Origin: Iphione sp. A-MEVVRFRX5
Lineage: Eukaryota
Direction: 5' to 3'
Assembly (NCBI GenBank): GCA_976226885.1
Contig: OZ320313.1
Location: 130,882,001 to 130,946,000, forward strand
DNA: 64,000 nt
Shown here: piece by piece, positions 5,906-33,207 of the stretch
Layout: every line of letters begins with the position of its first letter
Position numbering within the stretch: position 1 is the first letter of the stretch
The notes under the pieces: model-generated
What the model saw: only the letters and a program-made list of their open reading frames with translations
Databases searched by the model: none
Told to the model about the DNA's origin: nothing
Position numbers and translations under genes: made by a program

Positions 5906-6033
5906 TGTAATATATTTGGATTTTACTTTGGTGAGAGAGAAACACAGGACACAACGCCATGCTGCTTCAGAACCGGAAGTGAATTTATTCATGAGTTCTG
6001 ATTGGTTGAAAATACAATCTCGCCGACATGACA
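5906..6033 (-). repeat. 5' LTR (128 bp)
   Basis: Direct repeat of 836-963; minus strand contains CCAAT and AATAAA (5989-5984). Confidence 0.97.
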
Positions 6034-6103: not shown

Positions 6104-6309
6104 CTCTCGCTGTACATATCTGTTGCTGCCGTCCTCCCTAACAAAAGCCATGACCTTGAAACCTGTGTCACCGTAACCTTCCTTAGTGAAGCGGAAGTTG
6201 AGGGGATCGTCGATTCTATCCGGGAAGACGTTCCACGAGGTTCCCTGGATGCCCTCGTAGATAAGCTGACGTCTCTGGTCGCCTTTCTCCCTGAGACAGC
6301 CAGCAATAC
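6104..6309 (-). CDS. Exon 27 (module 5; last exon visible in window)
   Basis: IAGCL...LNFRFTKEGYGDTGFKV...RYVQRE; donor GAG|GTATGT, phase 0. No further exon found in 1-835. Confidence 0.88.
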
Positions 6310-9300
6310 CTGGAGATAGGACCATGGGCACAGATACAACACGTGATACTCACACACACACACGCGCGCGCGCACGAGTACGCGAATACAAATCACAATG
6401 TGGACATTCCTAGTATTAAGAACATTTCGCTTGAGAACAAATACTTTCGAATCTAGTCTAAATAAAAGTCACAATGTGGACACAGAGGGAGTAAAGTAGG
6501 AGGTAATCAGAGAACAGGAAAAGAAAGAGGAGTAAGGTGAAGGACGCATGGAAAAGAAAGGGAGAGGGATGGAAGAGAGGAAGAGATGGCGTGGATGAGA
6601 AAGGAAAGATAACATGAATAATGGATAATGGTGGAAGGAGAGGAAAAGTTCCAGTCACAGCCTAGTTTTCTTGTTTCTTTCCCTCTTACAGCTTACACCT
6701 GTCGATTGTAAATCCGACATACCTATTGGACTGTCCTGACAGTTGCCTGCATTCAGTAAACCCAGGGCGCTGACGTACGTGGCGATGATGGTCTGCAGCA
6801 CAGACTCGTCCTGCCGCACCATGGCGGGGCTGAGGCGGTCGGAGGAGGCACATACGCGGGCATACTGGTCGTCAGCCAACGAGCTGTTTTCCAGCTTACA
6901 CTAAAGAACGACGAGTCATATTCACAGGGTTGGAGGAAAAGTCATGGTAATGCATAGCGTTAGTACACCTTCAGAATTTAACAGTGGTATATCAATATCA
7001 ACTAAAGCGAGCAAACCGCTGGCGAGACCAAAACTGGCAACGCAGTTCCTAGCTTGGTCTCTAGGCGTGTATCACAATACATATTAAAGAAAGCTTCTTT
7101 TCAAAAATATCTATGTTACAGATCATATAATCACATCTATTTCCGAACTAAATGTAAGGAAGTGTAAGACCTCATTCCAAAGCCATCCTCCTCTAAAGAC
7201 CACTTTCACTGAAGAAGATGTGGTGATCTTTCCAGAGAGGTTCTACTATTCACAATATTTCAGCTGGTGGAGCATAAGTTACTTGTCTTCATTAACAGTA
7301 ATTAAAACCAGTAGTTAAAAGACAGTGCTAGATACTCTACCTGGGATACTGAATTATGTTAAGGTAATTATAGGTGATCCCCAGCATCTTAAATAACTTC
7401 ACCTGTCTGTATAAGAACTGAATATGTTATAATTAGAAATATATTACAACCGATATTATAGAGGCAAGGTTACATCTGACAGGTGGCAGTTTCGGCATTT
7501 CTTACTGTAATCAGAGTAACTGATGTTTGCTTAACGGTGATTAACTGACCAGTCGCTGTGGAACTTGAAACTTGAAGGTTAAATTGGCCCATCGCTTGGG
7601 GGGATGGTTGAACATCGTCTGAGTACACTTGTCTCTGGGTAATATACCCACTAACACATTTCCCAGCTACATACCCTTGCTAAATGGTGAAGGGTTATTC
7701 ACAACTAGGAAATGTACAATGATATCAATGGCCTCAGCAGTCGAAGCCAACTGAAGATTGGACAATGTCAAAGCCTACCAGAGATACCTCATTTCTATCA
7801 CTCACTTGTAGGGAGAGCTGCCAGAACTCAACGAACCAGTCATCCGGGATATCGCCGTGGTTAGCCACGGTCAGACTCGTCACGTAGTCGATAAAGCCCT
7901 GCACTTGATCCTCCCTCAACTATACACAGGAGACACGAAGTTGATCAATGAACAGGGCGCAAATAGAATAAACGCATCGCTAGCGCTCTGCGCTATGAGG
8001 AAATAATTGCGACATCGCACTTGCAAGAAATAAACCATTAATACCTCAGCTTTGAGGTCCTTAGATGTTTGTTTTATTCATAGTCAGATGAATATACATA
8101 GTTTCACAGGGGCTTGGCAATTATTTTCACAGAATGAAGTAGACAAGTCAAGCTTCTCCAAACGTTATAGAATTGTCTGAATGTTAGTGTCTATATATAC
8201 ATGTACAAAGTTGAAGGCGTGTGTTTATCAGTGTACACCGACTCTTGTATTGGTGAGCTTCACCATGATGTACACGCACTGCGTAGATGTCGGGGGTTCG
8301 TCCAAGCCCCCAAGAGAAAAGTTTAGTAACACCCAATTATAATGGACCTGTATGTTTACGTGAAGTATGCAGCGTGTTTGGTGGCTGTGAATAGTCTCAC
8401 TATGTCACCATGCTGACGTGTGCTCATGTAACATGTTCAGCATGTAATAACTCAGTGTATAACCATAGCACCCATTGAAGCACAACAGAATAGGACAGCT
8501 GCAAATTTGAAAACACAGTATGTGCACACACTACATGCTATGTGCTACGCATGTGCAAGGAACAACTATGTTAGAATATTTGTTTTCAAAAGAACATGGC
8601 GAAAACACAGCGTTATGGCCATGTAAACAAGTGTACAGGAAAACTTAGCCTTAGCTCAGACTTTTTCATGGCTCGATTACCAAGATTCCACTCTTCATAC
8701 AAGTAGTATGTTATGATTCCTTATGGCAGACGTGGATACATACTCTTTGTGATACAGAAACAATCTTTTGTGACCACTGGAGGGACCAGCCGATTCTGGC
8801 CTTAATAGAGGGCTGTTTCTAAATATGTATTATATAATACTAGGACCAGTGATTGTCGCATGGAGTAACAATGTGAAAATGGTGGCAAAATGATGCTATG
8901 ATTGTTTAGATCTGCAGTGAGCAATGTGTCATAGGTCATGCATTATGATGTGGTTCAGCGATTAGTTAATTCTAGTTGAGTTTTCCTCAGGTTTAGTTGC
9001 GACTGTGTTGACCTACTAATGTATGACATGATGCGTGTACTCACTTTGAGACTGATGGCTCCATTCGCAGCCGACTCCACCCCTCTGGTGGTGGAGTCAC
9101 TCACTCCAGCCGTGGAGCTGAGGAAGATGAAGTTGTCCTCCAGGTTAAGGTCACGTGCTGCTTCCAGAAGAAGGCGAGTCTGCTCCTCGTTCGTGAACAA
9201 CACCACCGCTCTGGCACCTGATTTGGGGGAGAGGACAAAAAAACCCACATAAATTAACTTCCTGCTTACAGTAGAACCTCACCACCGGGGACACCCAAGC

Positions 9301-12300
9301 CAGGAGACATGTACGATGGGGACACTTTTGGCAGACAGAGGATCATACTTTGGCTATGCATAGTATCAACCAGGATTGTGAAGACTCCCAATTAACGTAG
9401 TTGCTCTCACCTTGTTGTTGGCTGAGATTTCGGAGCAGCTCCTGCGCCTGCGCGGCTGTGGCTCCCTCTGCTGGTAGAGTCAGACGCTGCCCTATGCAGA
9501 CATTTTTCTCTCCTGAGGAGTTGAAGAAGGCGGCCATGGCGCTGTTGGCTTCCTCTGTGTCGGAGTTGATGGCGCTGATGTAGTACCAGTCCAGCCTACG
9601 GGTCACCTCTGCCAGCACTTCAGCCTGCGAGAGATGTTGACCATTTTGTCATTAAAGTAGAAACCCGACCACATCACAGCAAAGACCAGACCAATAGAGA
9701 GATCATGATTTTTGAGAACGAGCCATTAATTAATGTCACTCCATAAAGGTGTTGTCTGATGAGAGTAAACTGTAGGAGAGGCCAAAATTGACAAGTCCCA
9801 AGCTTGGTACTAAACATGGGTTTCAACTGTATCTATAAACACAACGTAAAAAATCAGCTGTCTTTCGACTGTTCTATGTTGTCCTGAAGAAGTATAATTG
9901 CAGCTGTTACCAGGAATTGACAGACCAGAATAGCCCAATGTTTACTATGCTGAGGGACCTGTCCACGTTAGTCATTTAAGAATGCAAAAGCTAATGACTG
10001 AATAATACAGAAACACCTGTCATACTTCATCCTGTGAGACCACAACATTTACAGCATAAAAAGCAGTTCTGTGGACTGCCGAAGGTGAAAACCCCTTGGT
10101 TCTTGGCTGAAAGTACCCACGAGGTGGCCATGACCACATCATGGTCAAACAGTACAGTGGAGACCCGATTAAAGACCAGAGCTCATAAGAGATTGAATAG
10201 AGGCAGATACGAAATAATTCATTCTAAATAAGAATATGTCTACTGCAACCAAACCGTGTGTGAGACCAAAGTTGGCCAGCCCCAAGCTTTATACCTGTAC
10301 TAATTAGGTATACCACAGATATAAAGAGCTTCGTTCCGAGAACATTCTTTAATATAATGAAAGTATACCTGTACACACACGTCTTGTGTACTTGTACCTC
10401 TCGACTTACTTGCTTGCTGTCTGGCGGGATGGTGGAGAGGAAGTAGGGTTGTCCCGTCAGCCTGTCATCGCTGGAGGTGGGGCTAACAATGGTGACTCTC
10501 CTGGGTGAGAGGAGAGGGACCAAGACGGAAGAAGACGCCGATGCGTGGGGGATGAAGGCCACGATAGAGGAGGGGTCCACCTGGTGGCAATAAGCAAAAC
10601 CATTGCCTTTTAAAACAGACAATAGAATTTACTAGAGGGAATCCATGGAAATCCATGGACAACATATATTACTGCACTGACCGGGCGCATAGCAATGGCC
10701 ACAATGCTTATGTTAGAGGTGCTTATAATACAGCAGAAAACTGGTTGAATTTCAGTCGATACTTTGACTCAACGTATGGTAATATCTAACGTGAACATAT
10801 CAGATGTGTATTTGTTTATCCTTCTGTGACGGAATTTTTCAGATGACAAATGCATGTTTTAGAATATTACATCATACATGCAGCTAATGTAGTCGTCATT
10901 TTCATGCTAATCGAAGAAATGTAAGGCTTCATGTAGATATTTACCCGTCTATCGTATCTAGCATAATATGTGGAATTGCATACAGTTTTCCCAAATTCAC
11001 ACAGACACTGATCCATCTGCTTGCATCCTATGTATTACCTTACCAGGGCAAAGATGCCATCTTCCTCACACTGAATCTGACCCATCTGTCTAAACCCCAC
11101 CTGTGACCTACCCTAGCAGGGACACAATCTGCCTCACGTAGAAATTGACCTATGTCTAAACCCCAACCATGACCTACCCTAGCAGGGACACAATCTGCCT
11201 CACATAGACACTGACCTATCTGTCTAAACCCCAACCATGACGCACCTTAGCAGGGACATAATGTGCCTCACGTAGACACAGACCTATCTGGCTAAACCCA
11301 ACTGTGACCTACATGTACCTTAGCAGGGACACGATCTGCCTCATATAGAGACAGACCTATCTGTATAAAACCCAACTGTAACCTACCGTAGCAGAGACGC
11401 CATCTGCCTCACATAGACTCTGACCCATCAGCAAGCTGAAGGTATCTCGGGACACTCTCACGTCTGATCCACATGTGTCAATGGCCAGTCCACCCACATC
11501 TATGTTGTTAATGGTGCGATTAAACAGGTTCAAGGCATAGAAGAAAGCCAAAACATTCTGGAAGCCTGAGTCCGAGTTCAAAGGGCCACAACGCAGTGGC
11601 TCACGAGGATCAGGACCGTGTACATCAAAGAAGCCAACCAGGTTGAGGTTGGGACGAGTCCTTGCCATAGCGCGAGTGGGACGGTGGCCTGTGAGTTACC
11701 AATACAGAGGTCATACACAGAGCCCAACATAATAATACATGTATATATACATTTATATCGGTGGGACTGAAGCAACATTTTATCAAGACAAATATTTCGG
11801 TCCGTAATGTGGCAGAAGTATTGAACAATGTACATGTATATAATCTCATCCCAGGTGCTAACATCGGAGTTCACCACAACTACAGGTATGACAGTATCAG
11901 CGCCATAGCTGGTAGTGTGTTCTAACATGGCTGGGGGTGCGCCTCTTATCTTTTAACATTACCACAAGAATACGATGTGACATCGATGAGGAGGCTTCAT
12001 TCTCAGGCGACTCGTTAACACAGGTATACCTATATACATGATGGTATGCAGGTATACGTCGCTTAATGAAGTAGATGTATTCAATGAAGTCATTTTTTAT
12101 CAAAGGTTCACCATTACTGCACAATATTTAAGTGGATAGCTAGTAAAAACAGTTTGTATGTGTAGTACATGGTATATTTGGTTGCCTCCTTCAATCTGAT
12201 CAGTTCTTCTTGGAAGAGTTAATAGACATCAGCCTCAGGCCAGAAAGTACTTTTATAGAAAACACCTTTGTTATAAATGTGCTTCATTCGGATCATACAG

Positions 12301-12911
12301 GTAAAGGTGGTAAACTTTATTATAAAGATGTTTCACCCCTAAAGGGTTTCCAAATGGAGATATACCTGTGTAATGAACATGTATATTTACGTACCCAGTG
12401 TGGCACACTCCTGACAAGCTCCAGGTGATGAACAATCGGAGGACCATGTGATCTCGAACTCCTGGCGTGGTCGGATCTTGAGCAGGTGGGAGTCGTTGTA
12501 GCTGCCCACCTAAGAAGGAAGGCTCCTGTTAGACTTACTCTATACATGCACAAACACCTGGTCATCTCACGGGGGGAGGGGAGTCAGGGGTAAAACAATG
12601 TGATAATAACACACATAACTATTGGCGCTGAAATTACTAGAATCTGGATAACGATTGCTTTTAGAGGTATAGCGTCTGGCGTTAAGGCACGTTGTACCGA
12701 TCCAATGCTATAAAATAATAATCTGCCCTATCCTCTTTTGCAATATATGTGCCATGTATTTTAAACCAAGCAGACTTAGTTAAACATTAACTTCCTTACA
12801 ATCTCACTATGGAGTTTCATAATTCGTTGAGTCTTGTTTGTTTCTATGTCTGTCTCTATATATCTGTCCGTCGCTGCCTTTCTCTCTCTTCTTCTTTCTC
12901 CCTCCCTTACT

Positions 12912-12973
<62 letters not shown>

Positions 12974-15900
12974 ACTCTGTGTTACACTTACATTCTCATA
13001 ATAGAAGTTAGCACTGCCTAGTGGTCGACGGGCTGTGTAGATGTGGTAGCCTCGGTTACTCTCACCATCCGACGTGAACTGGAACTGTTGGTTGGTGGCG
13101 TCCCGGAAGGTGGCGCGCCGGATACCTTCCAGCATGAGCTGGCGGCGGTTCGCCGCATTCCGGAAGTTCTGACACACGCCATTATAGCTGTCACCGCATG
13201 TTTGCTGGAAAAGTATAATATACACATAACCTTAGCAAGGTAATTTTTGTCACTTAAACATATCTCGACGAACCACAGTCGGCTCACGCTTACCGAAGAC
13301 TCAATAATACGAATATGCTTTATATCCGAATGTCTTCTGAAGGAAACATTTTAATTTTAAACAAACAATTCAGTTTCTCATAAGCGAATAGGCCTTATAA
13401 CAAAACCACCTACAAAGAAACAGACTGTGCAAGTGTGTGCCAATATGAAAGTACAGTAATACTTCTCTCCAACGGTCACCTTTAGTTCCAGTTAGTTTAT
13501 GACCATTGCGGAGAGGTTGTTTAGAGTATGTAATATAGAAATCTGTTTCAATGCCATTTGGCCATAATGGGAGATGACCGCTTGAGAGGGATTACCGTTA
13601 GTAGAGCTCCTACTGTAGTACTTATGATACAGTAGGGACTCTCCCCAAGAGCTTGTCATCTTTGGTTCCAGTAAATTTACGACCATTAAGAGAGGTGACT
13701 ACAGGAGGGAAAGATTAGTGTGCAGACCCGTAGGCATGAATTTTTGTGGGTGGTATCAGAAATTAGAGAGGTGGACTCATGATTAGAAAAGTGGAACTCT
13801 GCCACTTTCTCTTCCTCTCTTTCCCTTTCCTTCTTCTCCTCTCTACCTGCCTCTCTCCTCCATGTCTCCTCCCAGTCGCTCTTTCCTCGTCCCACTGTTT
13901 CCCTCAGACAGACTGTCACCTAGCATATTAACTTTATAAAGAGACTGGGTGGAGCTAATTGCCTTTGTGGGGGGGGGGTAGTATTGGTCGATACCCCCAA
14001 TACCCCCTGGCTACCGGCCTGGTGTGTGTAAGCATACTGTTACAAAGACATATGGCCATACTAAGGCGGTGACCGCAGGAGAGGGCTGGCTATTAGAAAG
14101 GTTGATATTGTACATGCATATGCTAACAACAGTATTAGTAGAATATGTTGTGTACACCACTACTCAAGACTCACCCTGAGGGCATAGTCCAGACCAAGCG
14201 CTGCAGAGTACACCGCGTTTGTAGTGTAGAGGACGTAAGCATCCTGTGTGTATCCTGGTGCCCGCACAATGTCGCGCATGGGCAGTTCACAAGCAGTTCG
14301 AAACCTGGATGACCCCGGGGTCAGTGAACACCCATACACTTCCTCGTAATACTAAAAAGACAAGCTCTCTTATTAGTATATTTTAAGTAAATGCATATTC
14401 TGAATCGTGAATTTCTTACTGTATACATATGTCGCACACGTCTCTTTTTAAGACGGTAGGAGTTTGTGATTATTTCTAATAAGGGCAAGTTTATGGGGAT
14501 ACGTTTGGCATCATGGTTGGGTGCATGTAGAATGATTTAAATCTAAATGGTACAGTCATCAACTTTGGAGATGACATGACATTTCATGATGCTTCCAGTT
14601 GAAATATGAATGAAAACAGATCTATATTAATGACGATGATTCTATTGCTATCCTTACATCATATAAAAAAAGCAAATTGTGCCTATCAATTGAGCTGGAC
14701 GGATATTAAAACGATTAAAATTTAACTTTTTATCCTTTTGTTCTATGTCACTATATAACTCTCTGATGGAAGTTCTATTATGATATCACGAAAGGTAAAA
14801 ATAAAGGGCAATAACCTTCTTTATAGATTTAGTTTTGTGCCACAATATTTCTTTAAATTATTACTCCAATTTAACAACAGTTTATGCATAGATGTCTGAC
14901 ACTTAGGCCCCGTTTCCATTAATTTGGAAGCATGTATGTGCGTAGACATGTGTAGACATGCATATTTTTCAATCACACTGCCTTCATATTTTTAACCTCA
15001 AATTCGCTGCAGCCTCACACAACCTCATGCAACCTCGAAGGACACTCCTGTGCGTGAGGTTGCGTGGGGAAAAATGCATGGTCACGTACATGACACGCAC
15101 ATGCTTGCTTATGAATGGTACCAGCTTTATGTGAACTGGGCCTTAGTCAACATCATAGATGTACAGTGGAACCTCTCTACTATAAAACAGCAAAGGGACT
15201 GACCAAGACTGAGTATTTAAACATGATTATATAGATTTGGTTCTGTTTTCCAGTCTGTCCATAGTGGGGGGTGTCCTTTATAGAGGGTGTCCTTAGTAGA
15301 GGGGTTCCACTGTACTTTTAAGGCTCATAACTATAACTGGATATGTAGGGCTTATTAGCCCATTTTTCTTCCAATAAAAGTAAACGTATAAAAAATGTAA
15401 ATGTAAATTTAGCTTTAACACTCGCCTCCTCGAACCATGGGTTCGCCCTTTGTCCGGCAGGATTCCCTAGGTAGCGGTCAAACGTACTGAGGTCAGCAGT
15501 TTCCACGCCCAGAGTGAGCGCATCGGCGGCCACTCTGTTGACACCCTCAAGGAGGTCAAGGCGATTCGACCAGGTCTCTGACCCGACAAAATGGAACTGA
15601 ATATCCTGAAAGAAAAAGCAACAATAACATCCTCAATACACGGCATTACCCCATACTGGAGTTAGACCCGTAACCGACATATGCGTGTCCGTGTGCATGT
15701 GGGGGTATAGTAGATGCTCACCAATGCGACCAATCAACAATGTGGGCAACCCCATAGATATTACGAGAATATCTCAGACAAGAGGGAAACTCTACAATAA
15801 GGGCAAAAATTTGCAGTCCCAGTGGTAATAGCATTACAGGGCTTTTACTGTATACATATCTACCTGTGTGACACGTTCCACAGCCTTAAGGAAGGCGTTG

Positions 15901-19925: not shown

Positions 19926-19969
<44 letters not shown>

Positions 19970-25900: not shown

Positions 25901-28900
25901 AGGCGGCCGAGCAACTCAACCACGGCCCGCAGGCCCGTCTCCTTCCCCGGGAGCAGCTCGGTAAAGAGCGGGAAGGCGACCCGATCGGAGAGCGCGGCGG
26001 GAGTGGGGAGGTAGCCGAGCTGAGGGAGAGGAATCCGACCTAATAAAGATGCTATCGCCATGGTGCTAGCGTCTTGGCCCGCCGCCGCGTAGCCTACCAC
26101 CGTGCGAGGGTCGGCTCCTCCAGGGTCGGTCCTTCCATGGAGGAAGTTCACCAGCGCATTATTGGCGATGTCGGCGCTCCCACAGTCATCCCAAGCGATC
26201 GCCCCAAGATTAACCCTTCCCGGCCAGAGGTTCTGATCCCGCGCGTACGTCAGACCGTATAGGAAAGCCTCAATCAGCTCAGCCCCACCGCCCTGTAGGT
26301 CGATCGGCCCACAGGAGAAGGCGGGCGAGCCGGGCAGGCGGACAGAGAACACGCCGCCTAACAACACGCTCCCCGCTACGTGCACCGGCCGGCCGCTGGG
26401 GGCGCCACCGGACAGACATGAGCGACACCCAGTGCTTGGGCACCGAGACTCCGGAAGTGACGTCAGAGGCAGCGTTCGGCTGGGGTTGTACATCCGGATC
26501 AAGTTCTTGTTGAGGTTGAGTGTGCCATCACGGAAGGTTCCGACCTACAAAGTATAAAGGAGGCGATAAGTTTATGTTAGTAATTATATTAGCCAAAATT
26601 TCCATGTGCAGTGCTTTCTGTCTGTGTTCTCCTGAAAGAGAGATGTTATATTTCTTTTGCTGCAACAAGTTCCAATCAAAGCAATACTGTATCTGTGTTG
26701 TTTCAGAAGAACAAAGATAGAAATCACAGGCAGATGGAAATAGTTTTTGTGCATAAATGATGGTCACTACGGGGATGCTGGACATACCGTGGGGGCTGGA
26801 CAGGGTGAAAGATCTCTTTTCAATGGAGAGAAATAGGAGTCAGTTGAATCTTTTCGATGGAAAGAAATCGGAGTCAGTTGAATGACAGCAATGCTTGCCC
26901 CCCCCCCTCATCCTTAGCAACCACACTTCTGCTATGGGGTCTATTAACCTACCCGCTGTAAGCGGTAGCTGCCCTGTCTGTTGTTGTAGTTATATACGGC
27001 ATAGCTGAGGTCGGCGGCCTCCCCACCGCGCGTAAAACGCACTCGCCGCGCCGATAGTTCCGGTTGAGTGGTTGTGGAGGCCAAGGTCGACACACGGTCG
27101 TCAGAACCGAAGGTGAAGTCCACCGGCAGGAGATACTTCCGGTAGAAATCCTCGGATGACATGCGCAGGAATGAGGGGCACAAGCCACGTGACTGACCGC
27201 GACAAAGATCGGCGCGCGCATCGCGGACGGCGCGGGCAACGGCAAAGACAGCGACAACAGCGCTCTCTACCGCCTGCGCTTGCTGGAAGTTGGTACGGCG
27301 CTGAGAGTCTGACATCTGAGGACAGGGAGGGTAGCTGTTGTAGGGTGTGGACGTCACACCTGCGAGAAACAATACCTTCATGTACTGACATGATAAAGGT
27401 AAAAATGAGACCCTTATATACACATGACATGACACCTGGGAGAGCACATTAGACAACCTTCATACATTTACCAACGAGAATAAGAAATAGGCCATGGACG
27501 TGTATGGTTTCTCAGCAATAGAGACCAAGCTTCTGAACTAGGTTTGAGCTATTTTGAGTTGTACTTTCTACAATGGCATGCTTAGAGAAAAAAACGTCGG
27601 GTATACATGCATATTTGTACATGTATTTGGTGGGTAATCTTCAGAATCTGTTGCATTTCCGATTCGCATTCTTTCGTGAGTCTTTCCTCCAATCAAAAAT
27701 CACAGCAGGTTGGAACATGCTAATGATAGATAAGACCTTTGGTCACTACATATAACCTATGTGGATTCAGGAGTGTCTTGGTGAGCTCTGCTACTTACAT
27801 GAGTTCTGTCAAACACTAGACTGTAGTTACATGATAGCGAAAAATATAAATGGTGCATAGTAAACTCACTGGTGGAACCTCAATTTTACCCCCGCTACCC
27901 CCCCCCCCATATATACATGTATATAATTAACAAAAGCTAATGGGTCAGTTAGATTAACGGTGCATAGTTCACTCACCAGGTAGGCGGCAGCGATTGGTGG
28001 TCATATACCACTCCGAGTACCAGGGATTGTCTGTCGGGGGGCTGTTGGCGCTCAGCCTCACCCAATGGTCCTCAAACTCCCGAATCTGCCGGCTTGCTGC
28101 CGCCATGGTCAAAACTCCACGAGCGTAAGGTCTACAGTTTAGGGGAAGGAGTTCAAGTTAGGAGTTAGACATAGAAAGGCCAATAATCGAAACTCACTTC
28201 AACTACTGCCATACATCTCTTCATAACACCCAGAAACACACAGGGACTGTCATAATAAACACCCAGGGGCTGTCATAATACACACCGAGGGATTGTCATA
28301 ATACAGAGCCACCACAGGTATACCGCTCTTCACAACGCAGAGACATATAGGGACTGTCATAATGAAGAGCACCTGTCGTAACCGAGTACATTTGTTCCTT
28401 GAAAGTCAGTAAATTTGAACCTGATACTGTGACTGAAAATTATTAAAGGGAACACATAGAACCTGAGCTAAACTAGTTCCTCTAACGAGGGATAATCTAT
28501 TTCGCCCCTCTCTTTCTTTCCATCTCCCTCCCTGCCTGCCCCTTTATCTCTCCCTCCCTCTCGCTTTCTATCTCTCTCTCTCTCCCCCTCTCTCTCTCCC
28601 TCCTCGTCGGCCTACCTCAGTACTCACTCAGTTACTCTTTACAGCTAACCACTTAATCCGGTATTCAACAAACGCTTCGCTCCTACAAGTATCTCTGTAG
28701 CTCACCTCCCCTGTATGATAGAAAGGTCTGTTCCGACGCTCTCAGGTAGCACCCACTGTAAACGGCCGGAGTTTGCCACGCTGGACCCCATGTCCATCAG
28801 AAGGGCAGCAGACGCCGCGTCTCCCAGGAAGACGACGGCAGTCGCCGGTCCCGCCACCAGGGTACGCACGGCATCCCGGTAGATGGTCTCTGCAAGAGAG

Positions 28901-31900
28901 TTAGAAGCTCATGTACAACATAAATACCCAAATGCAAAGGGACTAATTTCCATGAACCAGATTCATTTTTCAATGAAACTACACAAGAGTCCGTATATAT
29001 TTAGGGTTCGCCCCAACCGCGATTCCTTTAGGTATGACTATCATATTCACCCGAAGTTACCTCAAAGAGCCTGGCTGTTAGCTGTAACGATGGTAGACCT
29101 AGTCTCCAGTTGGATAGTCTGGCCAGCACAGTACTATTGTAAGCATTTGCCATCGATAGTCACGTTATTGTCATCATCATAATTTATAGTTGCTGTGAAT
29201 GATAAGATTATCAACAATAACTAATACATACATGTTAACGTCCACTGAAAGAAATTTCTGTACTTACCTGACATGCCGCCACCTGGCAGATGAACAGCCT
29301 GTCTCAAATATACACCAGCATTGTTTCTATACGTACCTGAGGTGGCCCCATCTGGCAAGTGGACAGTCACACAAACACCAACAGAAACCTCAGGCGGCTC
29401 TATCTGGCAGCTGGACTGAAGACTGAAACAAACACCAGCATTCTTTTTGTGCTTATCTGGTTACCTGTGTTTACCTTACCTTACCTTGTGGCTCAATCTG
29501 GCATGCAGAAAGCCTGACACAAACGGGCACCAGCATGATTTCTGTATTTACCTGAGGTAGCTCCATCTGGCAGGCGGACGGCCTGACTCACACAGACACC
29601 AGCATTGCCAGCGCCCTCTGTAAGGGACGCCAAGCCATGGCGGCCATATTCGCTGTCCGTGTAAGCCACTGCCACGTTAGTCCAGCCCATCGCCGCTAGG
29701 GTCGCCAGCAGCGCCTAGTTATCACGAAACAAAATGGACAGGTTTTCATGAGACATTAAGGATGATTTAACGCGTGATTTACATACTGATCATCAAGATT
29801 AATATGCACCTTTTTACGGCCCTCAAGCTGGTGTGAAAGGTCTCCTATTCCCGGCCTTCACAGAAAATACAGTATGACACAAAATCTGTGACATTTTTTA
29901 TGATACCTTACGAAACCCTGGCAATGTTTCCCTCACATTTAGCAAGCTTAAAGCGTCCATAACTGATAAACCTTTTGTGAAATTTGAAGGGTATATATCA
30001 ATCAAAAATATCAAGGATCAAATAGATTGAAAGTTATATGGACAACAAGGCCTCAAGAGACGGTCAAACCTAAGGAAAGGTATGACAGAGTAAGGACAGA
30101 CGCATTGGCGGACCTTTGTACCGGTCCCGGGAGATGATACCTACCTGGGTCTGGAAGGTCTGGGAGGGCACGGTCCTCACCACGTACGGGAAGTCGTCCG
30201 TGTCAGCCAGAGCGGGCGAGGTGGAGGCGAAGTGGACGGAGGGGATCTGGTAGCGACCCAGGACATCGGACACCTGGCGGGCCACCATCCCCCGAGCGTT
30301 GGTCAGCACCCCTACCATGACAGCAAAATAGATGTTTTATGTATGTATACATATGCCATTTCTTATCATGGATAAAATTCATGTCACTCTGTCAATCCCC
30401 GTAAGTTCGGTCTCTGTGTCCAAGGAGATTATCATTCATGTTCGGGATTCAAAGATGCCGATAGCAGTGTTGTTCGATTCCGGCAGGGGGAGAGAATCAA
30501 ATTTCAAATTTTCAAATTTTCAGACAGCATAATTCACAGACTCAGGCAGCAAATATTCCACGCCCCCGCTAGAAGGTTAGCTTCTCTACGGCCTTGCACC
30601 CAGGATATTACCACTTACCGACCATAGCTGTGGACACATTGCTTGCGCAGCGCTGTTCAGAGGTGCCCAGCTCAGGGAGGATGTTGATTAGACTGTCGAT
30701 GGCCACTTCCGGTCTCTGGCAGGTGTCCTCCATCAGCACACCTACAGGAATGATGTTTAAGTTTTGTGGAGACTTTCATCGTTTATGAGGTTACTTTTAC
30801 TCAAACAATGTTATATTCTTGGTCAAAATCAATCCAGACTGCGTCGGCATACATTGGGTTACTTTCACTTAAAGTAAATGTTATACTTTCACAAATACAC
30901 ATACGCACACACTGTCACCATACATCTGCTTACTTCCAAATAGACACTGCCAACGTATTCAGACACTGCAATAATATTTTACTTAGCCAGCATCGCCATA
31001 TGTCAGGTTACTTCACTATGACACTGTCATAGTACATCTGCTTACCTTCAAATAGACATTGCCATCATACATTGGGTTACATTCATTCAAACAGTGTCAA
31101 CGTAGAGTTACCTTCACTCAGATACTATCCCCCTACATCAGCTTATTTTTTTTCAGACACTGTCATCATGATTATGTGTCTGGTTGCCTCCACTCAGACA
31201 GTGTTATCATACACCGGCTTTCTCCCACTCAGACAGTGTTATTGTACATTCATATACATGTACAATGTATTTTGTTACTTTCAGTAAGAATGGGCTTGAT
31301 TGCTAACATCTGGCTATGGCTGGTCACCTCCTCACAGTAAAAATCTTGGGCACTTTTTCCAGCATACTGTCATGATAAACATTGTTACACAGCCATAATA
31401 CACTTGAGATTTTTTCATCAGACATCACACTTGTTCATAGATCTTTTATTGCAGATTGCAGGAATGGATATACATTGTACATCAAGTGCATTATCCTATT
31501 CGATACAACGCAGTGGCAAAGGTGAGGGTTATGTGAGATCGAGAATGTAGGGTATGGGGTGTGGAAATTAGCTTAGTGCTTTACGATTTCAGTCAATGAT
31601 TAGAATTGCAGAATCTATTCAATGTTTTGTCGTACAACTTCAAACATGGTGTGCATAGACATTTGCCATGTAAATTTATTATTTACTGGCTTAACACTCT
31701 GATTATATCAATGAATATCGGAAACAGTTTGTTGGCCTCTGCCATAACGGCGAGCAACTCGCAGGATCGGTTCCAAACATTATTGACCGACAGCCATAAA
31801 AAGACTGAAAATGGTGCGTCCATCCAAACCCCTCTAATGTACAATCTCCCCCCCCCCCCGTCCAGTTGACTGATCACTGGATGGTCGAAAACACCACTGC

Positions 31901-33207
31901 AAAATAACATTTTATGCTTTTCCGACTGAAAAACACTGTGTTGTTGCTGGGTGGTTGGCACTCGGGCAAAAGGTCAATTATGCCCTATATCCCCTGACCC
32001 TAATCTGCTCTGTGCTAACAATATGAGGATAATTGCTATTAGACAACTGCAGAGGGCCTAGGGGTTGACCTAAGAGAATACAGTGTGTGTCTGTACCTAC
32101 CTAGTTTTACCCCTGGTATGTAGGAGTCGGTGATCCGCCGGCCGTTGATTGTACCGCTGTCTTGGTTGATCGTGTCAACTGCCCAGCGAATAGCCTCATA
32201 TTCTTGCATGCCCCCTAGTGACAAGGAAAAACAGTCAGAAGACAACTGTGAAAAATGCTGCATGTGTGTATGTCAGTGACAATCTACCTGATCACAAAAA
32301 CTAATATTAAAGCAGGGAGTTTACGACATCTTGTCTGATATTCTCGTTAAGGTTCCCCATTTCTCTTCCTTATATTCTGCTGATGTTTCTAATCAACAAA
32401 AACAGTATTCAACACAAGCTGTTGTAAGGTAACATCAAATGACACTTTTAAAAACGAACAGGTCATGATATGAACAAGAACAGAATTAAGAATAGTTCAC
32501 CAAAGAACAATTACTGCATGGTCTACAGTAGAACCTTAGTATTGGGGCCCCAGAACATGGGAGAGATTTTCTTGGAACCATGGCTGTTGTCGTTAATTTA
32601 TGTACCTCTCAGATGTGGGGACACCCCCTGAACGGGTGCACATTCATTGGGAAGGAAGGGGGTCCCCAGATACAAGGTTCTTCTGTGTGCAGGAATACCT
32701 CTCTAAATGAAGCCTCTGATAACAGAGCTCCTTTATACGTGTAATGAAATTGGCTATTTTGACAGTCTCGTGACCCATGACCACTGTCCATTTATCGTTT
32801 TAACGGTAACAACTGAAAATGGAAGGGTCATATAGAGACACATGTATACTTTTACCATGAAAAATGATTCATTAACAAATATTTACTCAGGAACAATGCT
32901 AATTCACACTGAAATGGTGTTGCTCTTATAATGAAGTTGCTCACAACAAAACACAGGGGAATAACTGTATAAATGTAATTTGCCCACCTGTAGATGGGCC
33001 TCCGCAGCCATAGTTGTCTCCTCCTTGCTCGCTCAGGGAGAGTAGCCCCCCGACCAGGACCTGAGCCGACCCCCCGCCTACCACGGCCGACCGTTTACTA
33101 CCACACACCTCCTGGCGCACTGGTCCCCCGCCCGCTACACACGTGACCTCCAACAGCAAGGTCACCGTCACCAGCAACAGCACCATCACTGACGTGGGTG
33201 ACGTCAT
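6104..33207 (-). CDS. Multi-exon gene (27 coding exons in window, 3'-incomplete): class C GPCR-like protein with signal peptide and at least 5 tandem Venus flytrap (ANF_receptor/PBP1 mGluR-like) modules, at least 2454 aa
   Basis: All 27 exons have AG acceptors and GT (two GC) donors with matching phases, total 7362 nt. Each module repeats mGluR/CaSR VFT hallmarks: GLFxVH, C, EAFxxA, GGxxxDxC, RTVPxD, W.YV, NPWF.E.....C, NAVY, F...G....Y. Confidence 0.9.
6723..6900 (-). CDS. Exon 26 (module 5)
   Basis: CKLENSS...RVC...DESVLQTIIATY...NCQDSPIG; phases 0/1. Confidence 0.88.
7806..7919 (-). CDS. Exon 25 (module 5)
   Basis: LREDQVQGFIDYVTSL...DDWFVEFWQLSLQ; phases 0/0. Confidence 0.9.
9045..9217 (-). 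CDS. Exon 24 (module 5)
   Basis: ARAVVLFTNEEQTRLLLEAA...FIFLSS...ANGAISLK; phases 1/0. Confidence 0.9.
9411..9624 (-). CDS. Exon 23 (module 5)
   Basis: AEVLAEVTRRLDWYYISAINS...VCIGQ...NLSQQQG; phases 0/1. Confidence 0.9.
10410..10580 (-). CDS. Exon 22 (module 5)
   Basis: VDPSSIVAFI...PYFLSTIPPDSKQ; phases 0/0. Confidence 0.88.
11035..11430 (-). repeat. Tandem array (about 6 units of 62-75 bp) derived from the 3' end and donor site of exon 21
   Basis: Unit ACCTACCCTAGCAGGGACACAATCTGCCTCACATAGACACTGACCTATCTGTCTAAACCCCAACC aligns with the last ~45 nt of the exon plus the intron start. Confidence 0.9.
11387..11688 (-). CDS. Exon 21 (start of module 5)
   Basis: HRPTRAMARTRPNLNLVGFFDVH...LRCG...GGLAIDTC...LCEADGVSAT; phases 1/0. 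Confidence 0.88.
12395..12509 (-). CDS. Exon 20 (end of module 4, linker 4)
   Basis: VGSYNDSHLLKIRPRQEFEITWSSDCSSPGACQECATLG; phases 0/1. Confidence 0.88.
12905..12975. repeat. (CT)n microsatellite
   Basis: Long CT run. Confidence 0.95.
12992..13204 (-). CDS. Exon 19 (module 4)
   Basis: QTCGDSYNGVCQNF...FQFTSDGESNRGYHIY...YYEN; phases 0/0. Confidence 0.9.
13454..13615. mobile_element. Degenerate Tc1/mariner-type MITE
   Basis: TA|CAGTA...TACTG|TA ends; imperfect TIRs. Confidence 0.4.
13723..14021 (+). mobile_element. CAGG-TIR mini-element, copy A (degenerate, 299 bp)
   Basis: CAGACCCGTAGGCA...GATACCCCCAATACCCCCTGGCTACCGGCCTG; same ends and internal AGAGGTGGAACTC motif as copy B. Confidence 0.7.
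14175..14351 (-). CDS. Exon 18 (module 4)
   Basis: YYEEVYGCSL...AC...DAYVLYTTNAVYSAALGLDYALR; phases 0/0. Not in the ORF track. Confidence 0.9.
14906..15142. mobile_element. PIF/Harbinger-type MITE
   Basis: TTA|GGCCCCGTTTC...GAACTGGGCC|TTA (TTA TSD) with internal inverted blocks. Confidence 0.7.
15164..15312. mobile_element. Tc1/mariner-type MITE (149 bp)
   Basis: TA TSD; TIRs CAGTGGAACCTCTCTACT / AGTAGAGGGGTTCCACTG (17/18 match). Confidence 0.85.
15426..15605 (-). CDS. Exon 17 (module 4)
   Basis: DIQFHFVGSETWS...FDRYL...NPWFEE; GC donor GAG|GCGAGT; phases 0/0. Confidence 0.87.
15864..16115 (-). CDS. Exon 16 (module 4)
   Basis: VVHSPGTYGDDAARQF...ICVAQ...VVVTF...AVERVTQ; phases 0/0. Confidence 0.9.
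16739..16987 (-). CDS. Exon 15 (module 4)
   Basis: SGNTRINPDNIEVYVGAYDSDTS...PQLSYGATS...YPNFLRTVPADD...EYVQ; phases 0/0 require the acceptor at 16988, not the one 4 nt further in. Confidence 0.9.
17279..17662 (+). mobile_element. CAGG-TIR mini-element, copy B (384 bp)
   Basis: 14-bp TIR CAGGCCCGTAGCCA/TGGCTACGGGCCTG flanked by the 6-bp direct repeat GATTTC; interior has duplicated AGAGGTGGAACTCC and C/T tracts. Confidence 0.85.
17834..18078 (-). CDS. Exon 14 (module 4)
   Basis: LFDVHASGNGPFTCG...VEAFNFALGRVN...GGVALDTCSSP...LLPLT; phases 1/0. Confidence 0.92.
18100..18250. repeat. (TATG)n-like microsatellite
   Basis: GTAT/ATGT repeats; a second patch lies at about 18445-18510. Confidence 0.85.
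18759..19111 (-). CDS. Exon 13 (end of module 3, linker 3, start of module 4)
   Basis: CGINYNGVCQAF...IGSYRDG...SDCPGVCTQC...PGSVLLAG; phases 2/1. Confidence 0.92.
19317..19489 (-). CDS. Exon 12 (module 3)
   Basis: ELYQCNLPG...NC...DARVLTTVNAVYALVEAIHLALRER; phases 0/2. Confidence 0.9.
19995..20066 (+). mobile_element. CAGG-TIR mini-element, copy C (72-bp minimal core)
   Basis: CAGGCCCGTAGCCAGG...GGGGGTATCGGACGATACCCC...TGGCTACGGGC flanked by the 6-bp direct repeat AACCAG. Confidence 0.85.
21402..22009 (-). CDS. Exon 11 (module 3)
   Basis: WLMYTSG...YPTFYRTVPSDDKQAMAMARFVDYMGWRYV...NPWFNEAYQ; phases 1/0. Confidence 0.92.
23573..24041 (-). CDS. Exon 10 (linker 2, start of module 3)
   Basis: IGDVQY...SCSGAPVCPDC...DGDLLLAGLFNVH...LDDCSSPLRA...DIKG; phases 0/1. 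Confidence 0.92.
25108..26544 (-). CDS. Exon 9 (1437 bp; linker 1 plus essentially all of VFT module 2)
   Basis: VGTFRDG...SRCPSTGCRSC...GGVFSVR...NPWLKQWYEAAFSC...YDILYRAPGANTFTM; ends at a GC donor (ATG|GCAAGT); phases 0/0. Confidence 0.88.
26953..27359 (-). CDS. Exon 8 (module 1)
   Basis: GVTSTPYNSYPPCPQ...AVVAVFAVARA...LCRGQSRGLC...YAVYNYNNRQGSYRLQR; phases 1/0. Confidence 0.88.
27977..28131 (-). CDS. Exon 7 (module 1)
   Basis: PYARGVLTMAAASRQIREFEDHW...DNPWYSEWYMTTNRCRLP; phases 2/1. Confidence 0.88.
28706..28889 (-). CDS. Exon 6 (module 1)
   Basis: ETIYRDAVRTLVAGPATAVVFLG...LQWVLPESVGTDLSIIQGR; phases 1/2. Confidence 0.85.
29261..29610 (-). repeat. Tandem degenerate copies (about 5) of the 3' end and donor of exon 5
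   Basis: TACCTGAGG..CCATCTGGCA...ACACCAGCATT recurs at about 29265, 29334, 29386, 29480 and in the exon itself. Confidence 0.8.
29552..29714 (-). CDS. Exon 5 (module 1)
   Basis: ALLATLAAMGWTNVAVAYTDSEYGRHG...VCVSQAVRLPDGATS; phases 0/1. Confidence 0.9.
30145..30311 (-). CDS. Exon 4 (module 1)
   Basis: VLTNARG...QIPSVHFASTSPALADTDDFPYVVRTVPSQTFQTQ; phases 1/0. Confidence 0.9.
30619..30741 (-). CDS. Exon 3 (module 1)
   Basis: GVLMEDTCQRPEVAIDSLINILPELGTSEQRCASNVSTAMVG; |GTAAGT donor, phases 1/1. Not in the ORF track. Confidence 0.88.
30790..31440. repeat. Degenerate ~35-bp minisatellite in intron 2
   Basis: Recurring (G)TTACTT(T)CAC..CAGACACTGTCATCATACAT motif. Confidence 0.65.
32101..32214 (-). 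CDS. Exon 2 (module 1)
   Basis: GGMQEYEAIRWAVDTINQDSG...IPGVKLG; TAG| acceptor, |GTAGGT donor, phases 1/1. Confidence 0.9.
32988..33207 (-). CDS. Exon 1 (signal peptide, start of VFT module 1)
   Basis: MTSPTSVMVLLLVTVTLLLEVTCVAG...VLVGGLLSL...YGCGGPST; donor G|GTGGGC, phase 1. An upstream acceptor at about 33240 implies a 5'UTR intron. Confidence 0.85.

What the first reader, a model, noticed from the sequence alone, without database searches (positions are those of the whole stretch)
6104..33207. Class C GPCR-like gene with at least five Venus flytrap modules in tandem (a possible multi-sensor receptor)
Seen: 27 exons join in phase into 2454 codons with a signal peptide and five successive ~480-aa repeats, each with VFT hallmarks. 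M1 is exons 1-8, M2 exon 9, M3 exons 10-13, M4 exons 13-20 and M5 exons 21-27+. Established: mGluRs, CaSR, GPRC6A, T1Rs and V2Rs have exactly one VFT per chain. Inference: this is an intact receptor or secreted sensor with a chain of ligand-binding clamshells, possibly for combinatorial chemosensing or ligand relay. Similar predicted proteins may already exist as uncharacterised models in invertebrate annotations, so the novelty is likely functional rather than absolute. The ORF track fragments this gene beyond recognition.
Basis: partly seen in the sequence, partly recalled or inferred. Interest (0 to 1): 0.92.

Follow-up and report, generated by a model that had tools for sequence, protein, structure and literature searches.

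The report
Receptor gene with five flytrap domains

Summary
On the minus strand, 27 exons (33207 to 6104) join in phase into 7368 nt, or 2456 codons. There is no stop or frameshift. The product has a signal peptide and five complete ANF_receptor/Venus-flytrap (VFT) modules.

- **One chain:** All four module junctions lie inside single exons, so this is not a gene array.
- **Family:** The product is collinear end to end, at about 33-35% identity, with a family of roughly 2800-aa predicted proteins built as 5 x VFT + 7tm_3. Members occur in nemerteans, molluscs, an annelid, a brachiopod and amphioxus. Hemichordates, echinoderms and a lobster have four VFTs. All are "uncharacterized" or misnamed mGluR3/GRM7-like, and I found no paper on them.
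- **Age:** Each module position forms its own clade across phyla, so the five-module chain is ancient.
- **Transcripts:** Intron-free 9-kb contigs from sequencing-run assemblies encode whole orthologues.
- **7TM:** It is not in the window. In the nearest relative's locus, six exons (linker plus 7TM) follow the homologue of exon 27.
- **Insertion:** Here that intron holds a young, intact, same-strand Ty3/gypsy element.
- **Pockets:** Only modules 3 and 4 keep the full amino-acid-binding pentad.

The multi-sensor function is untested. The scan also noted the 3-Cys linker on this same DNA (s1-352055).

The parts
32988..33207 (-). Exon 1: ATG at 33207, signal peptide (residues 1-24), start of VFT module 1
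32101..32214 (-). Exon 2 (M1)
   Evidence: Boundaries chosen by 5-7 of 8 guide proteins; same junctions in relative L002
30619..30741 (-). Exon 3 (M1)
30145..30311 (-). Exon 4 (M1)
   Evidence: 8 of 8 guides
29552..29714 (-). Exon 5 (M1)
28706..28889 (-). Exon 6 (M1)
27977..28131 (-). Exon 7 (M1)
26953..27359 (-). Exon 8 (M1, C-terminal lobe)
25108..26544 (-). Exon 9, 1437 nt: last strand of M1, 3-Cys linker 1 (26442-26416) and nearly all of M2 in one exon. GC-AG intron donor GCAAGT at 25107-25102
   Evidence: Pfam ANF_receptor E 7e-12; donor chosen by 7 of 8 guides; sequence read; homologous intron in L002
23573..24041 (-). Exon 10: last strand of M2, 3-Cys linker 2 (23939-23910), N-terminal lobe of M3
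21402..22009 (-). Exon 11 (M3 core)
   Evidence: Pfam ANF_receptor E 7.6e-30; 8 of 8 guides
19317..19489 (-). Exon 12 (M3)
   Evidence: 8 of 8 guides
18759..19111 (-). Exon 13: end of M3, 3-Cys linker 3 (18843-18820), first strand of M4
17834..18078 (-). Exon 14 (M4)
   Evidence: 8 of 8 guides
16739..16987 (-). Exon 15 (M4)
   Evidence: 8 of 8 guides
15864..16115 (-). Exon 16 (M4). The 3' end at 15864 was chosen by 5 of 8 guides and 15849 by 3
15420..15605 (-). Exon 17 (M4)
14175..14351 (-). Exon 18 (M4)
   Evidence: 8 of 8 guides
12992..13204 (-). Exon 19 (M4)
   Evidence: 8 of 8 guides
12395..12509 (-). Exon 20: last strand of M4, 3-Cys linker 4 (12434-12405), start of M5
11387..11688 (-). 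Exon 21 (M5; holds the odd loop cysteine C2096)
10410..10580 (-). Exon 22 (M5)
9411..9624 (-). Exon 23 (M5)
   Evidence: 8 of 8 guides
9045..9217 (-). Exon 24 (M5)
7806..7919 (-). Exon 25 (M5)
   Evidence: 8 of 8 guides
6723..6900 (-). Exon 26 (M5)
6104..6309 (-). Exon 27: end of M5. Phase-0 donor GAG|GTATGT at 6103-6098. The open frame continues into exons that are not in this window
836..6033 (-). Ty3/gypsy LTR retrotransposon, same strand as the gene, inside the intron after exon 27 (65 nt past the donor). LTRs are 836-963 and 5906-6033 (128 nt, TG..CA ends, one mismatch). The 5-bp target duplication CCACG is at 831-835 and 6034-6038. The intact 1343-aa gag-pol ORF is at 5111-1080
1..830 (-). 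Continuation of the same intron. No recognisable linker-5 or 7TM coding sequence

Best explanation
Shown: window 33207-6104 (minus strand) is the 5' part, 27 exons and 2456 codons, of one protein-coding gene. It is orthologous to a conserved bilaterian family of giant class C (mGluR-type) GPCRs. Family members are built as signal peptide, then five Venus-flytrap modules each followed by a short three-cysteine linker, then a 7TM domain. The full nine-cysteine CRD is absent. Inferred from orthologues and from the nearest relative's locus: the missing part (linker 5 plus the 7TM, about six exons) lies just beyond the left edge of the window, past an intron that has recently acquired a gypsy element. 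Inferred mechanism: M5, the membrane-proximal module, plays the role of the single VFT of an ordinary mGluR. It is the only module with an unpaired conserved cysteine, and that cysteine sits in the lobe-1 loop that carries the intersubunit disulfide in mGluRs. M5 would therefore dimerise covalently and drive the 7TM. The 7TM of the orthologues keeps the TM3-ECL2 disulfide and the K3.50/E6.35 lock residues. Every module keeps the lobe-2 cysteine that ties the VFT to the CRD in mGluRs, and every module is followed by three cysteines. The likely result is one linker-internal disulfide and one lobe-2-to-linker disulfide per module, so closure of one clamshell would pull on the next. M3 and M4 keep the complete alpha-amino-acid-binding pentad (Ser, Ser/Thr, Asp, Tyr, Glu/Asp) but lack the residues that read glutamate's side chain. 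They probably bind an amino acid or an amino-acid-like ligand other than glutamate. M1, M2 and M5 have altered pockets, implying other ligands, no ligand, or a structural or modulatory role.
For: - **Gene model:** It is open and canonical.
- **Domains:** Five ANF_receptor modules are present.
- **Junctions:** All four lie inside exons 9, 10, 13 and 20.
- **Collinearity:** A single BLASTP alignment of about 2450-2500 residues covers model residues ~10-2457 at ~33-35% identity in the 20 best-scoring of the 30 listed family proteins.
- **Orthologue architecture:** 5 x ANF_receptor + 7tm_3 with no NCD3G.
- **Transcript evidence:** Logan contig L001 is 9030 nt with one uninterrupted ORF (118-8526) encoding all 2802 aa. 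Other clusters come from 8.6-11 kb contigs, one with 852 member sequences.
- **Module phylogeny:** M1 to M5 each form a clade across phyla, SH-aLRT 98-100.
- **Nearest relative (L002/L003):** The same structure, no stops, pN 0.18-0.33 against pS 0.67-0.76, and six further exons encoding the 3-Cys linker 5 plus the 7TM.
- **Pocket residues:** Tabulated per module.
- **Cysteines:** Census and conservation.
- **7TM residues:** Invariant K627 and C606/C693, near-invariant N730/R735/W736, with the alignment to mGlu3.
- **Closest solved structures:** mGlu3/7/8/2 for the VFT (E 1e-53) and mGlu3/2 for the 7TM (E 1e-18).
- **Structure models:** AF2 of M5+7TM gives pLDDT 85.8, and Foldseek's best matches are full-length mGlu chains at E 1e-45. 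AF2 of M3-M4 gives pLDDT 88.3.
Against: - The 7TM of this particular gene was not seen; nothing 7TM-like lies in 1-6100.
- A same-strand LTR element 65 nt after the last donor could end or mis-splice transcripts of this allele.
- AF2 gives low confidence for every linker (pLDDT below 50-55) and only moderate pTM (0.55-0.62). Neither the disulfide pattern nor any rigid coupling between modules is supported by a model.
- Pocket residues of M1, M2 and M5 vary widely between species, which weakens any 'five sensors' reading.
- No expression or ligand data exist for any family member.
- The cysteine-parity argument assumes all other conserved cysteines are paired within the chain.
Confidence: 0.8

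Rival explanations
1. In this genome or haplotype the gene is cut short. The young same-strand gypsy element in the intron after exon 27 supplies termination or splice signals, so the product is a secreted five-VFT protein (read-through gives three more codons, V-C-N, before a stop) or the allele is null.
For: The element is intact and recent: LTRs with one mismatch in 128 nt, a perfect 5-bp target duplication, and an open 1343-aa ORF. It is in sense orientation and starts 65 nt past the donor. No 7TM exon is visible in the window.
Against: The insertion is intronic and leaves the donor GAG|GTATGT untouched. All 2456 codons are still open, but an insertion this young would not yet have allowed decay, so this is weak evidence. 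Family members with a complete 3' end carry the 7TM.
Confidence: 0.12
2. The chain is real, but most modules are not sensors. M1-M4 serve mainly as a long, stiff or adhesive stalk (spacer, matrix or partner-protein binding), and signalling depends on one module only.
For: The pocket pentad is degenerate and variable between species in M1, M2 and M5. M2 of this gene has a very long branch and a skewed composition.
Against: M3 and M4 keep the whole pentad in many species and in this gene. M4 is the most conserved module between this species and its relative, 73% against 51-56%. All modules are under purifying selection and keep all structural cysteines.
Confidence: 0.25
3. The five modules belong to separate genes or transcripts (a tandem array of VFT-only genes), and the long reading frame is an artefact of joining them, as happens in merged models of fish CaSR/V2R-like gene clusters.
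For: Merged multi-VFT models do exist. The Polypterus 'CASR, partial' proteins have 5-7 VFT stretches, and several fish hits have NCD3G between VFTs.
Against: Here each junction (end of one VFT, linker, start of the next) lies inside one exon. There is no 7TM, CRD, start codon with signal peptide, or stop between modules. Whole orthologues are encoded by single intron-free transcript contigs.
Confidence: 0.02
4. It is a decaying pseudogene.
For: The transposon insertion; the fast-evolving, GC-rich, intronless M2.
Against: There are no stops or frameshifts in 7368 nt, and splice sites are canonical. pN is far below pS in every module against the relative, including M2, with dN/dS about 0.12-0.14 where it could be computed.
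Confidence: 0.02

Closest known systems
Metabotropic glutamate receptors, groups II/III (mGlu3, mGlu2, mGlu7, mGlu8)
   Same: They are the closest solved relatives of both the VFT (E 1e-53) and the 7TM (E 1e-18). Shared features are the lobe-1 cysteine pair, the lobe-2 cysteine, two local disulfide pairs, a loop cysteine in the membrane-proximal VFT, the TM3-ECL2 disulfide and the K3.50/E6.35 residues. The alpha-amino-acid pentad is present in M3 and M4.
   Different: This family has five VFTs per chain instead of one. No nine-cysteine CRD (NCD3G) is present; each VFT is followed by a roughly 10-residue three-cysteine linker. The residues that bind glutamate's distal carboxylate (K74/R78/K405 in mGlu4 numbering) are not conserved in any module.
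Unnamed multi-VFT class C GPCR family in public annotations (for example Tubulanus XP_074641006, Capitella CAPTEDRAFT_209901, Aplysia LOC101850490, Octopus vulgaris 'metabotropic glutamate receptor 3', Saccoglossus LOC100374272, Branchiostoma LOC118426443)
   Same: Collinear over all five modules at about 33-35% identity. Modules are orthologous one by one. The linkers and every cysteine are the same. The window protein is sister to the Capitella protein (SH-like support 96).
   Different: The window shows only the ectodomain exons. M2 is unusually diverged and is encoded by a single exon. No member has a described function, so this is membership of an uncharacterised family.
GABA-B receptors
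   Same: Class C GPCRs that also lack the cysteine-rich domain between the VFT and the 7TM (established knowledge; stated in 10.1101/2025.04.15.649019).
   Different: GABA-B has one VFT per chain and no cysteine linker, and it is far more distant in sequence (7TM E about 1e-4).
BvgS-type bacterial sensor kinases with tandem periplasmic VFT domains (PMC4352136)
   Same: More than one VFT in series ahead of a membrane-embedded transducer. This is a useful analogy for how a membrane-proximal VFT can relay signals while distal ones modulate (abstract).
   Different: BvgS is bacterial, with two VFTs as far as I recall and, from my own knowledge, a different periplasmic-binding-protein class. Its output is a histidine kinase, and there is no homology beyond the general fold. 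The resemblance is an analogy only and was not tested here.
Merged gene models of fish CaSR/V2R (OlfC)-like clusters
   Same: They appear in searches as proteins with several ANF_receptor stretches.
   Different: They carry NCD3G, and in one unnamed merged-looking model (P0077, source not looked up) a 7tm_3 piece, between the VFTs. They cover only 22-48% of the query, so they are fused neighbouring genes rather than one multi-VFT chain.

Membership tests
Class C (glutamate-family) GPCR | Extracellular ANF_receptor / Venus-flytrap ligand-binding domain | tested here: met
   Pfam PF01094 hits on single exons. Five full modules by HMM. Closest PDB sequences are mGlu VFTs (on the orthologue).
Class C (glutamate-family) GPCR | 7tm_3 heptahelical domain in the same chain | tested here: inconclusive
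   Not present in window 1-6100. Present after VFT5 in the orthologues scanned with Pfam here, listed as a precomputed Pfam domain for nearly all other full-length family hits, and present as six exons after the exon-27 homologue in the nearest relative's locus L003. Sequence left of the window is needed.
Class C (glutamate-family) GPCR | TM3-ECL2 disulfide and the K3.50/E6.35 lock residues of the class C 7TM | not testable with these tools
   Met in orthologues: invariant C606/C693 and K627, near-invariant N730/R735/W736, and the alignment to mGlu3. The window's own 7TM is unseen.
mGluR/CaSR/T1R-type class C receptors | Nine-cysteine cysteine-rich domain (NCD3G) between VFT and 7TM | tested here: not met
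   No PF07562 hit in any family member scanned. Only a C-x3-5-C-x2-C linker follows each module, and the same holds between VFT5 and TM1 in orthologues and in L003.
mGluR/CaSR/T1R-type class C receptors | Exactly one VFT per chain | tested here: not met
   Five modules in one reading frame, with junctions inside exons.
Metabotropic glutamate receptor (glutamate-binding) | Basic residues that bind glutamate's distal carboxylate (mGlu4 K74, R78, K405 equivalents) | tested here: not met
   Not conserved in any of the five modules of the window protein or across the family.
Amino-acid-binding class C VFT | Pentad binding the alpha-amino-acid moiety (Ser159, Thr182, Asp of the PPD motif, Tyr230, Asp312 in mGlu4-like numbering) | tested here: met
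   Complete in M3 (S,S,D,Y,E) and M4 (S,T,D,Y,E). It is 3 of 5 in M1 and M5 and 1 of 5 in M2. The alignment is to an mGlu4/8-like reference, and the residue roles come from established mGluR and CaSR structures (my knowledge).
Multi-VFT class C GPCR family (uncharacterised database proteins) | Collinear five-module chain with module-by-module orthology | tested here: met
   Single ~2450-2500-residue alignments to the 20 best-scoring family proteins. Each module falls in its own cross-phylum clade, SH-aLRT 98-100.
Multi-VFT class C GPCR family (uncharacterised database proteins) | Three-cysteine linker after every module and an invariant lobe-2 cysteine in every module | tested here: met
   Linkers 1-4 at residues 546, 1025, 1497 and 1991. 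All are conserved at 97-100% across 39 family proteins, and the lobe-2 Cys at 100%. Linker 5 is off the window.
Venus kinase receptors / receptor guanylyl cyclases / iGluR amino-terminal domains | VFT followed by a tyrosine kinase, a guanylyl cyclase, or a ligand-gated channel core | tested here: not met
   Orthologues show only ANF_receptor (with the overlapping Peripla_BP_6) and 7tm_3.

The most novel reading that the evidence does not exclude
The five flytraps are five distinct ligand or state sensors, disulfide-stapled in series. One GPCR chain would then integrate several chemical inputs (coincidence or ratio detection) or pass a closure signal down the chain to a dimerising fifth module. 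That would be a mode of class C signalling with no described precedent, kept since before the protostome-deuterostome split and lost in vertebrates.
Probability: 0.2. Interest if true: 0.9.

Novelty: new variant of a known kind. Interest (0 to 1): 0.72.

Why it matters
The textbook class C GPCR has one flytrap per subunit, and the activation model (VFT closure, dimer reorientation, CRD approach, 7TM rearrangement) is built on that.

This gene belongs to a family kept for more than half a billion years in at least eight phyla. Members carry four or five flytraps in series and replace the cysteine-rich domain with a three-cysteine stub. The family sits in databases as "uncharacterized protein" or is misnamed mGluR3/GRM7-like.

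It offers a natural test of how far a VFT signal can travel, whether tandem VFTs pair within a chain, and what the minimal VFT-to-7TM coupler is. It also matters for annotation: multi-VFT models are not always merged genes, and receptor counts labelled "mGluR" in molluscs and annelids include these proteins.

The sequence points to concrete targets for experiments: the M3/M4 pockets, the odd cysteine in M5, and the linker cysteines.

Tried and rejected
1. **Spurious exons past 6100.** The first aligner runs continued beyond 6100 and invented small exons inside the gypsy element and in the low-complexity left end. The alignments there are junk, and I dropped them.
2. **Exon 27 end.** I first ended exon 27 at 6100 (phase 1). 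After seeing the phase-0 junction in the relative's locus and reading the bases, I corrected it to 6104, GAG|GTATGT.
3. **M2-to-M3 junction.** With GT donors only, the guides disagreed and inserted tiny filler exons. Allowing the consensus GC donor GCAAGT resolved it in 7 of 8 guides, and the relative has an intron at the same spot.
4. **7TM in the window.** tblastn and a motif scan of 1-835 and 1-6100 found no linker-5 or 7TM sequence.
5. **Neighbouring windows.** The scan's own notes held nothing on a 7TM for this gene.
6. **Inter-module geometry.** AF2 folded the modules well but gave low-confidence linkers and moderate pTM, so no geometry or disulfide map can be claimed.
7. **Shared intron positions.** Only some are shared between modules, so this does not inform the duplication mechanism.
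8. **Intronic repeat.** Only low-complexity matches turned up.
9. **Literature.** Seven searches and four papers read found no description of multi-VFT class C receptors. Subscription journals are not covered, so the absence is not proof.
10. **Other readings.** I rejected VKR, guanylyl-cyclase and iGluR-ATD readings (no such domains in orthologues) and the merged-gene-model reading.

Full report
**What is in the sequence.**
The window has no N runs. The minus strand between 33207 and 6104 holds many stop-free segments whose translations look like pieces of Venus-flytrap (VFT) domains. Pfam confirms ANF_receptor on single exons: E 7e-12 for the 479-codon exon at 26544-25108, and E 8e-30 for 22009-21402. 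tblastn of these pieces against the window shows five successive VFT N-terminal lobes, near 33000, 26400, 23900, 18100 and 11700.

**Gene model.**
I wrote a spliced protein-to-genome aligner with local alignment, canonical splice sites, three intron phases, and penalised frameshifts and stops. I ran it with eight full-length relatives as guides.
- No guide needed a frameshift or a stop.
- One junction, M2 to M3, resolved only when the consensus GC donor GCAAGT (25107-25102) was allowed. Then 7 of 8 guides chose it. The nearest relative has an intron at exactly that position, with a GT donor.
- The final coding sequence is 7368 nt, 2456 codons, with no stop.
- The N-terminus is the only strongly hydrophobic stretch, consistent with a signal peptide.

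**One chain, not five genes.**
A module HMM finds five complete modules. Between them lie four short linkers with the motif C-x3-5-C-x2-C, at residues 546, 1025, 1497 and 1991.
- Each linker sits in an exon that also encodes the last strand of the preceding module.
- For linkers 1-3, the same exon also encodes the start of the next module (exons 9, 10 and 13; linker 4 is in exon 20).
- There is no start codon with a signal peptide, no stop, no CRD and no 7TM between modules.

**The family.**
An exhaustive HMMER search with exon 9 against 1.84 billion representatives returned, directly below one 412-aa fragment, a set of 2730-2872-aa proteins with five matched stretches each. Pfam gives them 5 x ANF_receptor + 7tm_3 and no NCD3G. 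Their sources and names come:

| Group | Examples | VFT modules |
|---|---|---|
| Nemerteans | Tubulanus, Lineus | 5 |
| Molluscs | Many bivalves and gastropods, Octopus, Argonauta | 5 |
| Annelid | Capitella | 5 |
| Brachiopod | Lingula | 5 |
| Cephalochordate | Amphioxus | 5 |
| Hemichordates | Saccoglossus, Glandiceps | 4 |
| Echinoderms | Acanthaster, Anneissia, Antedon, Patiria; Asterias | 4; Asterias (2647 aa) gave five HMM stretches, four full-length |
| Crustacean | Panulirus (lobster) | 4 |

- All members are "uncharacterized" or "hypothetical", or are auto-named "metabotropic glutamate receptor 3" or "GRM7-like".
- The window protein aligns to the 20 best-scoring of the 30 listed members as one alignment of about 2450-2500 residues at ~33-35% identity.
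- In a full-length tree it is sister to the Capitella protein (SH-like support 96). The window therefore probably comes from an annelid or a near relative. No protein closer than about 35% overall is in the libraries.

**Transcript-level support.**
One orthologue is encoded by a 9030-nt contig assembled from a sequencing run, with a single ORF at 118-8526. Other clusters come from 8.6-11 kb contigs, one with 852 member sequences. Since the genomic gene here spans more than 27 kb with 26 introns, intron-free contigs of that size are best read as mRNAs carrying all five VFTs plus the 7TM.

**Age of the architecture.**
In a tree of 48 modules plus six single-VFT outgroups, the lophotrochozoan modules at each position M1 to M5 form a clade (SH-aLRT 98-100). 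M1 also groups with M1 of the hemichordate and the crinoid (97). M2, M3 and M4 form a clade (100) with M5 beside them. The five-module chain therefore predates the split of annelids, molluscs and nemerteans, and at least the M1-versus-rest distinction predates the protostome-deuterostome split.

**The nearest relative and the missing 7TM.**
The 412-aa fragment P0001, 52% identical to M2, comes from a 1.3-Mb ENA contig. I fetched two overlapping loci from it, L002 and L003.
- The same gene is there, with no stop or frameshift, and M2 is again a single exon.
- Identity to the window protein is 56% (M1), 51% (M2), 55% (M3), 73% (M4) and 67% (the first part of M5).
- Non-synonymous differences (pN 0.18-0.33) are far below synonymous ones (pS 0.67-0.76, saturated) in every module. 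Where computable, dN/dS is about 0.12-0.14, and this includes M2.
- After the homologue of exon 27 comes a 1.65-kb intron. Six exons follow, encoding [I]G-x-W, a 3-Cys linker 5 and a complete 7TM.
- In the window, nothing like this lies in 1-6100.

**The gypsy insertion.**
The intron after exon 27 holds a Ty3/gypsy element in the same orientation as the gene.
- Its LTRs are at 836-963 and 5906-6033: 128 nt, TG..CA ends, one mismatch.
- The target-site duplication CCACG lies at 831-835 and 6034-6038.
- It has an open 1343-aa ORF with protease, RT, RNase H and integrase domains.
- It starts 65 nt past the donor.
- The remaining exons are therefore expected just left of the window. Whether this young insertion disturbs the transcript cannot be told from the sequence.

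**How it probably works (inference).**
By sequence, both the VFTs and the 7TM are closest to group II/III mGluRs. An AF2 model of M5 + linker + 7TM of the Tubulanus orthologue is confident (pLDDT 85.8), and Foldseek's best matches are full-length mGlu chains (E 1e-45). I aligned all modules to an mGlu4/8-like reference and read off the pocket residues:

| Module | Alpha-amino-acid pentad | Score |
|---|---|---|
| M1 | partial | 3 of 5 |
| M2 | mostly lost | 1 of 5 |
| M3 | S, S, D, Y, E | complete |
| M4 | S, T, D, Y, E | complete |
| M5 | partial | 3 of 5 |

- The basic residues that read glutamate's side chain are not conserved in any module.
- Across the family, M3 and M4 are the best-kept pockets, and M4 is the slowest-evolving module.
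- Every cysteine of the mature window protein is conserved in the family, in 74-100% of members.
- Each module has the lobe-1 pair, two local pairs and the lobe-2 cysteine (100% conserved in all modules). In mGluRs that lobe-2 cysteine bonds to the CRD (my knowledge of the mGluR literature). Each module is followed by three linker cysteines.
- Counting cysteines, M2, M3 and M4 with their linkers come out even. M5 with linker 5 is odd. The extra cysteine, C2096 (95% conserved), lies in the lobe-1 loop that carries the intersubunit disulfide in mGluRs.
- I therefore read M5 as the dimerising, transducing VFT, and the linkers as stubs of the CRD that staple lobe 2 of each module to the start of the next.
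- The orthologues' 7TM keeps the TM3-ECL2 cysteines and the K3.50/E6.35 positions, so G-protein signalling is plausible.
- AF2 does not settle the chain's geometry. In both models the linkers have pLDDT below 50-55, and pTM is 0.55-0.62.

**Comparison with known systems.**
- It works like, and is related to, an mGluR. It fails two features that define the mGluR/CaSR/T1R type (one VFT, and a nine-cysteine CRD) and lacks the glutamate-specific residues, so the database label "mGluR3" is not justified.
- GABA-B also lacks a CRD but is far more distant.
- BvgS-type bacterial kinases have tandem VFTs (PMC4352136). This is an analogy only.
- Fish "multi-VFT" hits carry NCD3G between VFTs and cover less than half of the query. 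They are merged neighbouring genes.

**Novelty.**
I ran seven full-text searches, one with six locus identifiers, and read four GPCR-evolution papers. These included de Mendoza 2014, the 2025 choanoflagellate GPCR catalogue, the eLife 2018 GluR phylogeny and the cephalopod GPCR study. None mentions class C receptors with several VFTs. The library lacks most subscription journals, so this is absence of evidence. The proteins themselves are public predictions. The gene is thus a new member of an existing but undescribed family, and the family is a new variant of the class C receptor. The same scan noted the three-cysteine linker on this DNA (s1-352055); my counts agree with it.

**Limits.**
- The window's own 7TM is unseen.
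- There are no expression or ligand data.
- Splice sites are inferred from homology, with one alternative at exon 16 (15864 against 15849).
- The disulfide map and the dimer cysteine rest on parity arguments.
- The taxonomic placement rests on one FastTree tree.

Noticed in passing
window 831-6038: A very young, apparently autonomous Ty3/gypsy element. It has 128-nt LTRs differing at one base, a perfect CCACG target duplication and an uninterrupted 1343-aa gag-pol ORF (5111-1080, minus strand). It is inserted in sense orientation 65 nt downstream of the exon 27 donor of the receptor gene.
   Followed up: yes
window 25102-25107 (minus strand): The intron after exon 9 uses a GC-AG donor with the perfect GCAAGT consensus. 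The homologous intron in the nearest relative (L002, donor at 11216) uses GT.
   Followed up: yes
window 25108-26544: Module 2 is encoded by a single 1437-nt exon in a GC-rich stretch (about 0.51 against about 0.44 nearby), while its paralogous modules M3 and M4 are split into 4-8 exons. In the module tree it has by far the longest branch (2.03 against a median of 0.74), a skewed composition, and only 1 of 5 pocket residues. It is still under purifying selection and is also a single exon in the relative. This suggests an old intron loss plus a burst of change.
   Followed up: partly
Proteins P0003/P0161, P0162/P0163, P0166/P0180, P0167/P0004 (not in the window): Several species have two family members with consecutive locus numbers, so probably adjacent genes. 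In molluscs the two fall into two old clades, while in nemerteans they are lineage-specific duplicates. Class C receptors act as dimers, so paired genes could be heterodimer partners. No second copy lies in this window.
   Followed up: partly
window 53176-55595 (+): Two ORFs of a non-LTR retrotransposon: an endonuclease (Exo_endo_phos_2, E 1e-6) and a reverse transcriptase (RVT_1, E 1e-29, plus DUF6451). They are separated by about 670 nt, so the copy is probably broken.
   Followed up: partly
window 17610-17660 and 20013-20063; GA-rich tracts near 12907-12963, 17320-17610, 28517-28597 and 40680-40745: A short 51-nt segment is shared at 94% between two introns, and several introns hold GA-rich low-complexity tracts. 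No clear dispersed repeat family was established.
   Followed up: partly
Proteins P0055, P0058 and similar: Many proteins of about 1100 aa with two ANF_receptor domains and no 7tm_3 hit appear among the more distant matches. They could be a separate two-VFT family (secreted or single-pass). Their sources were not looked up.
   Followed up: no
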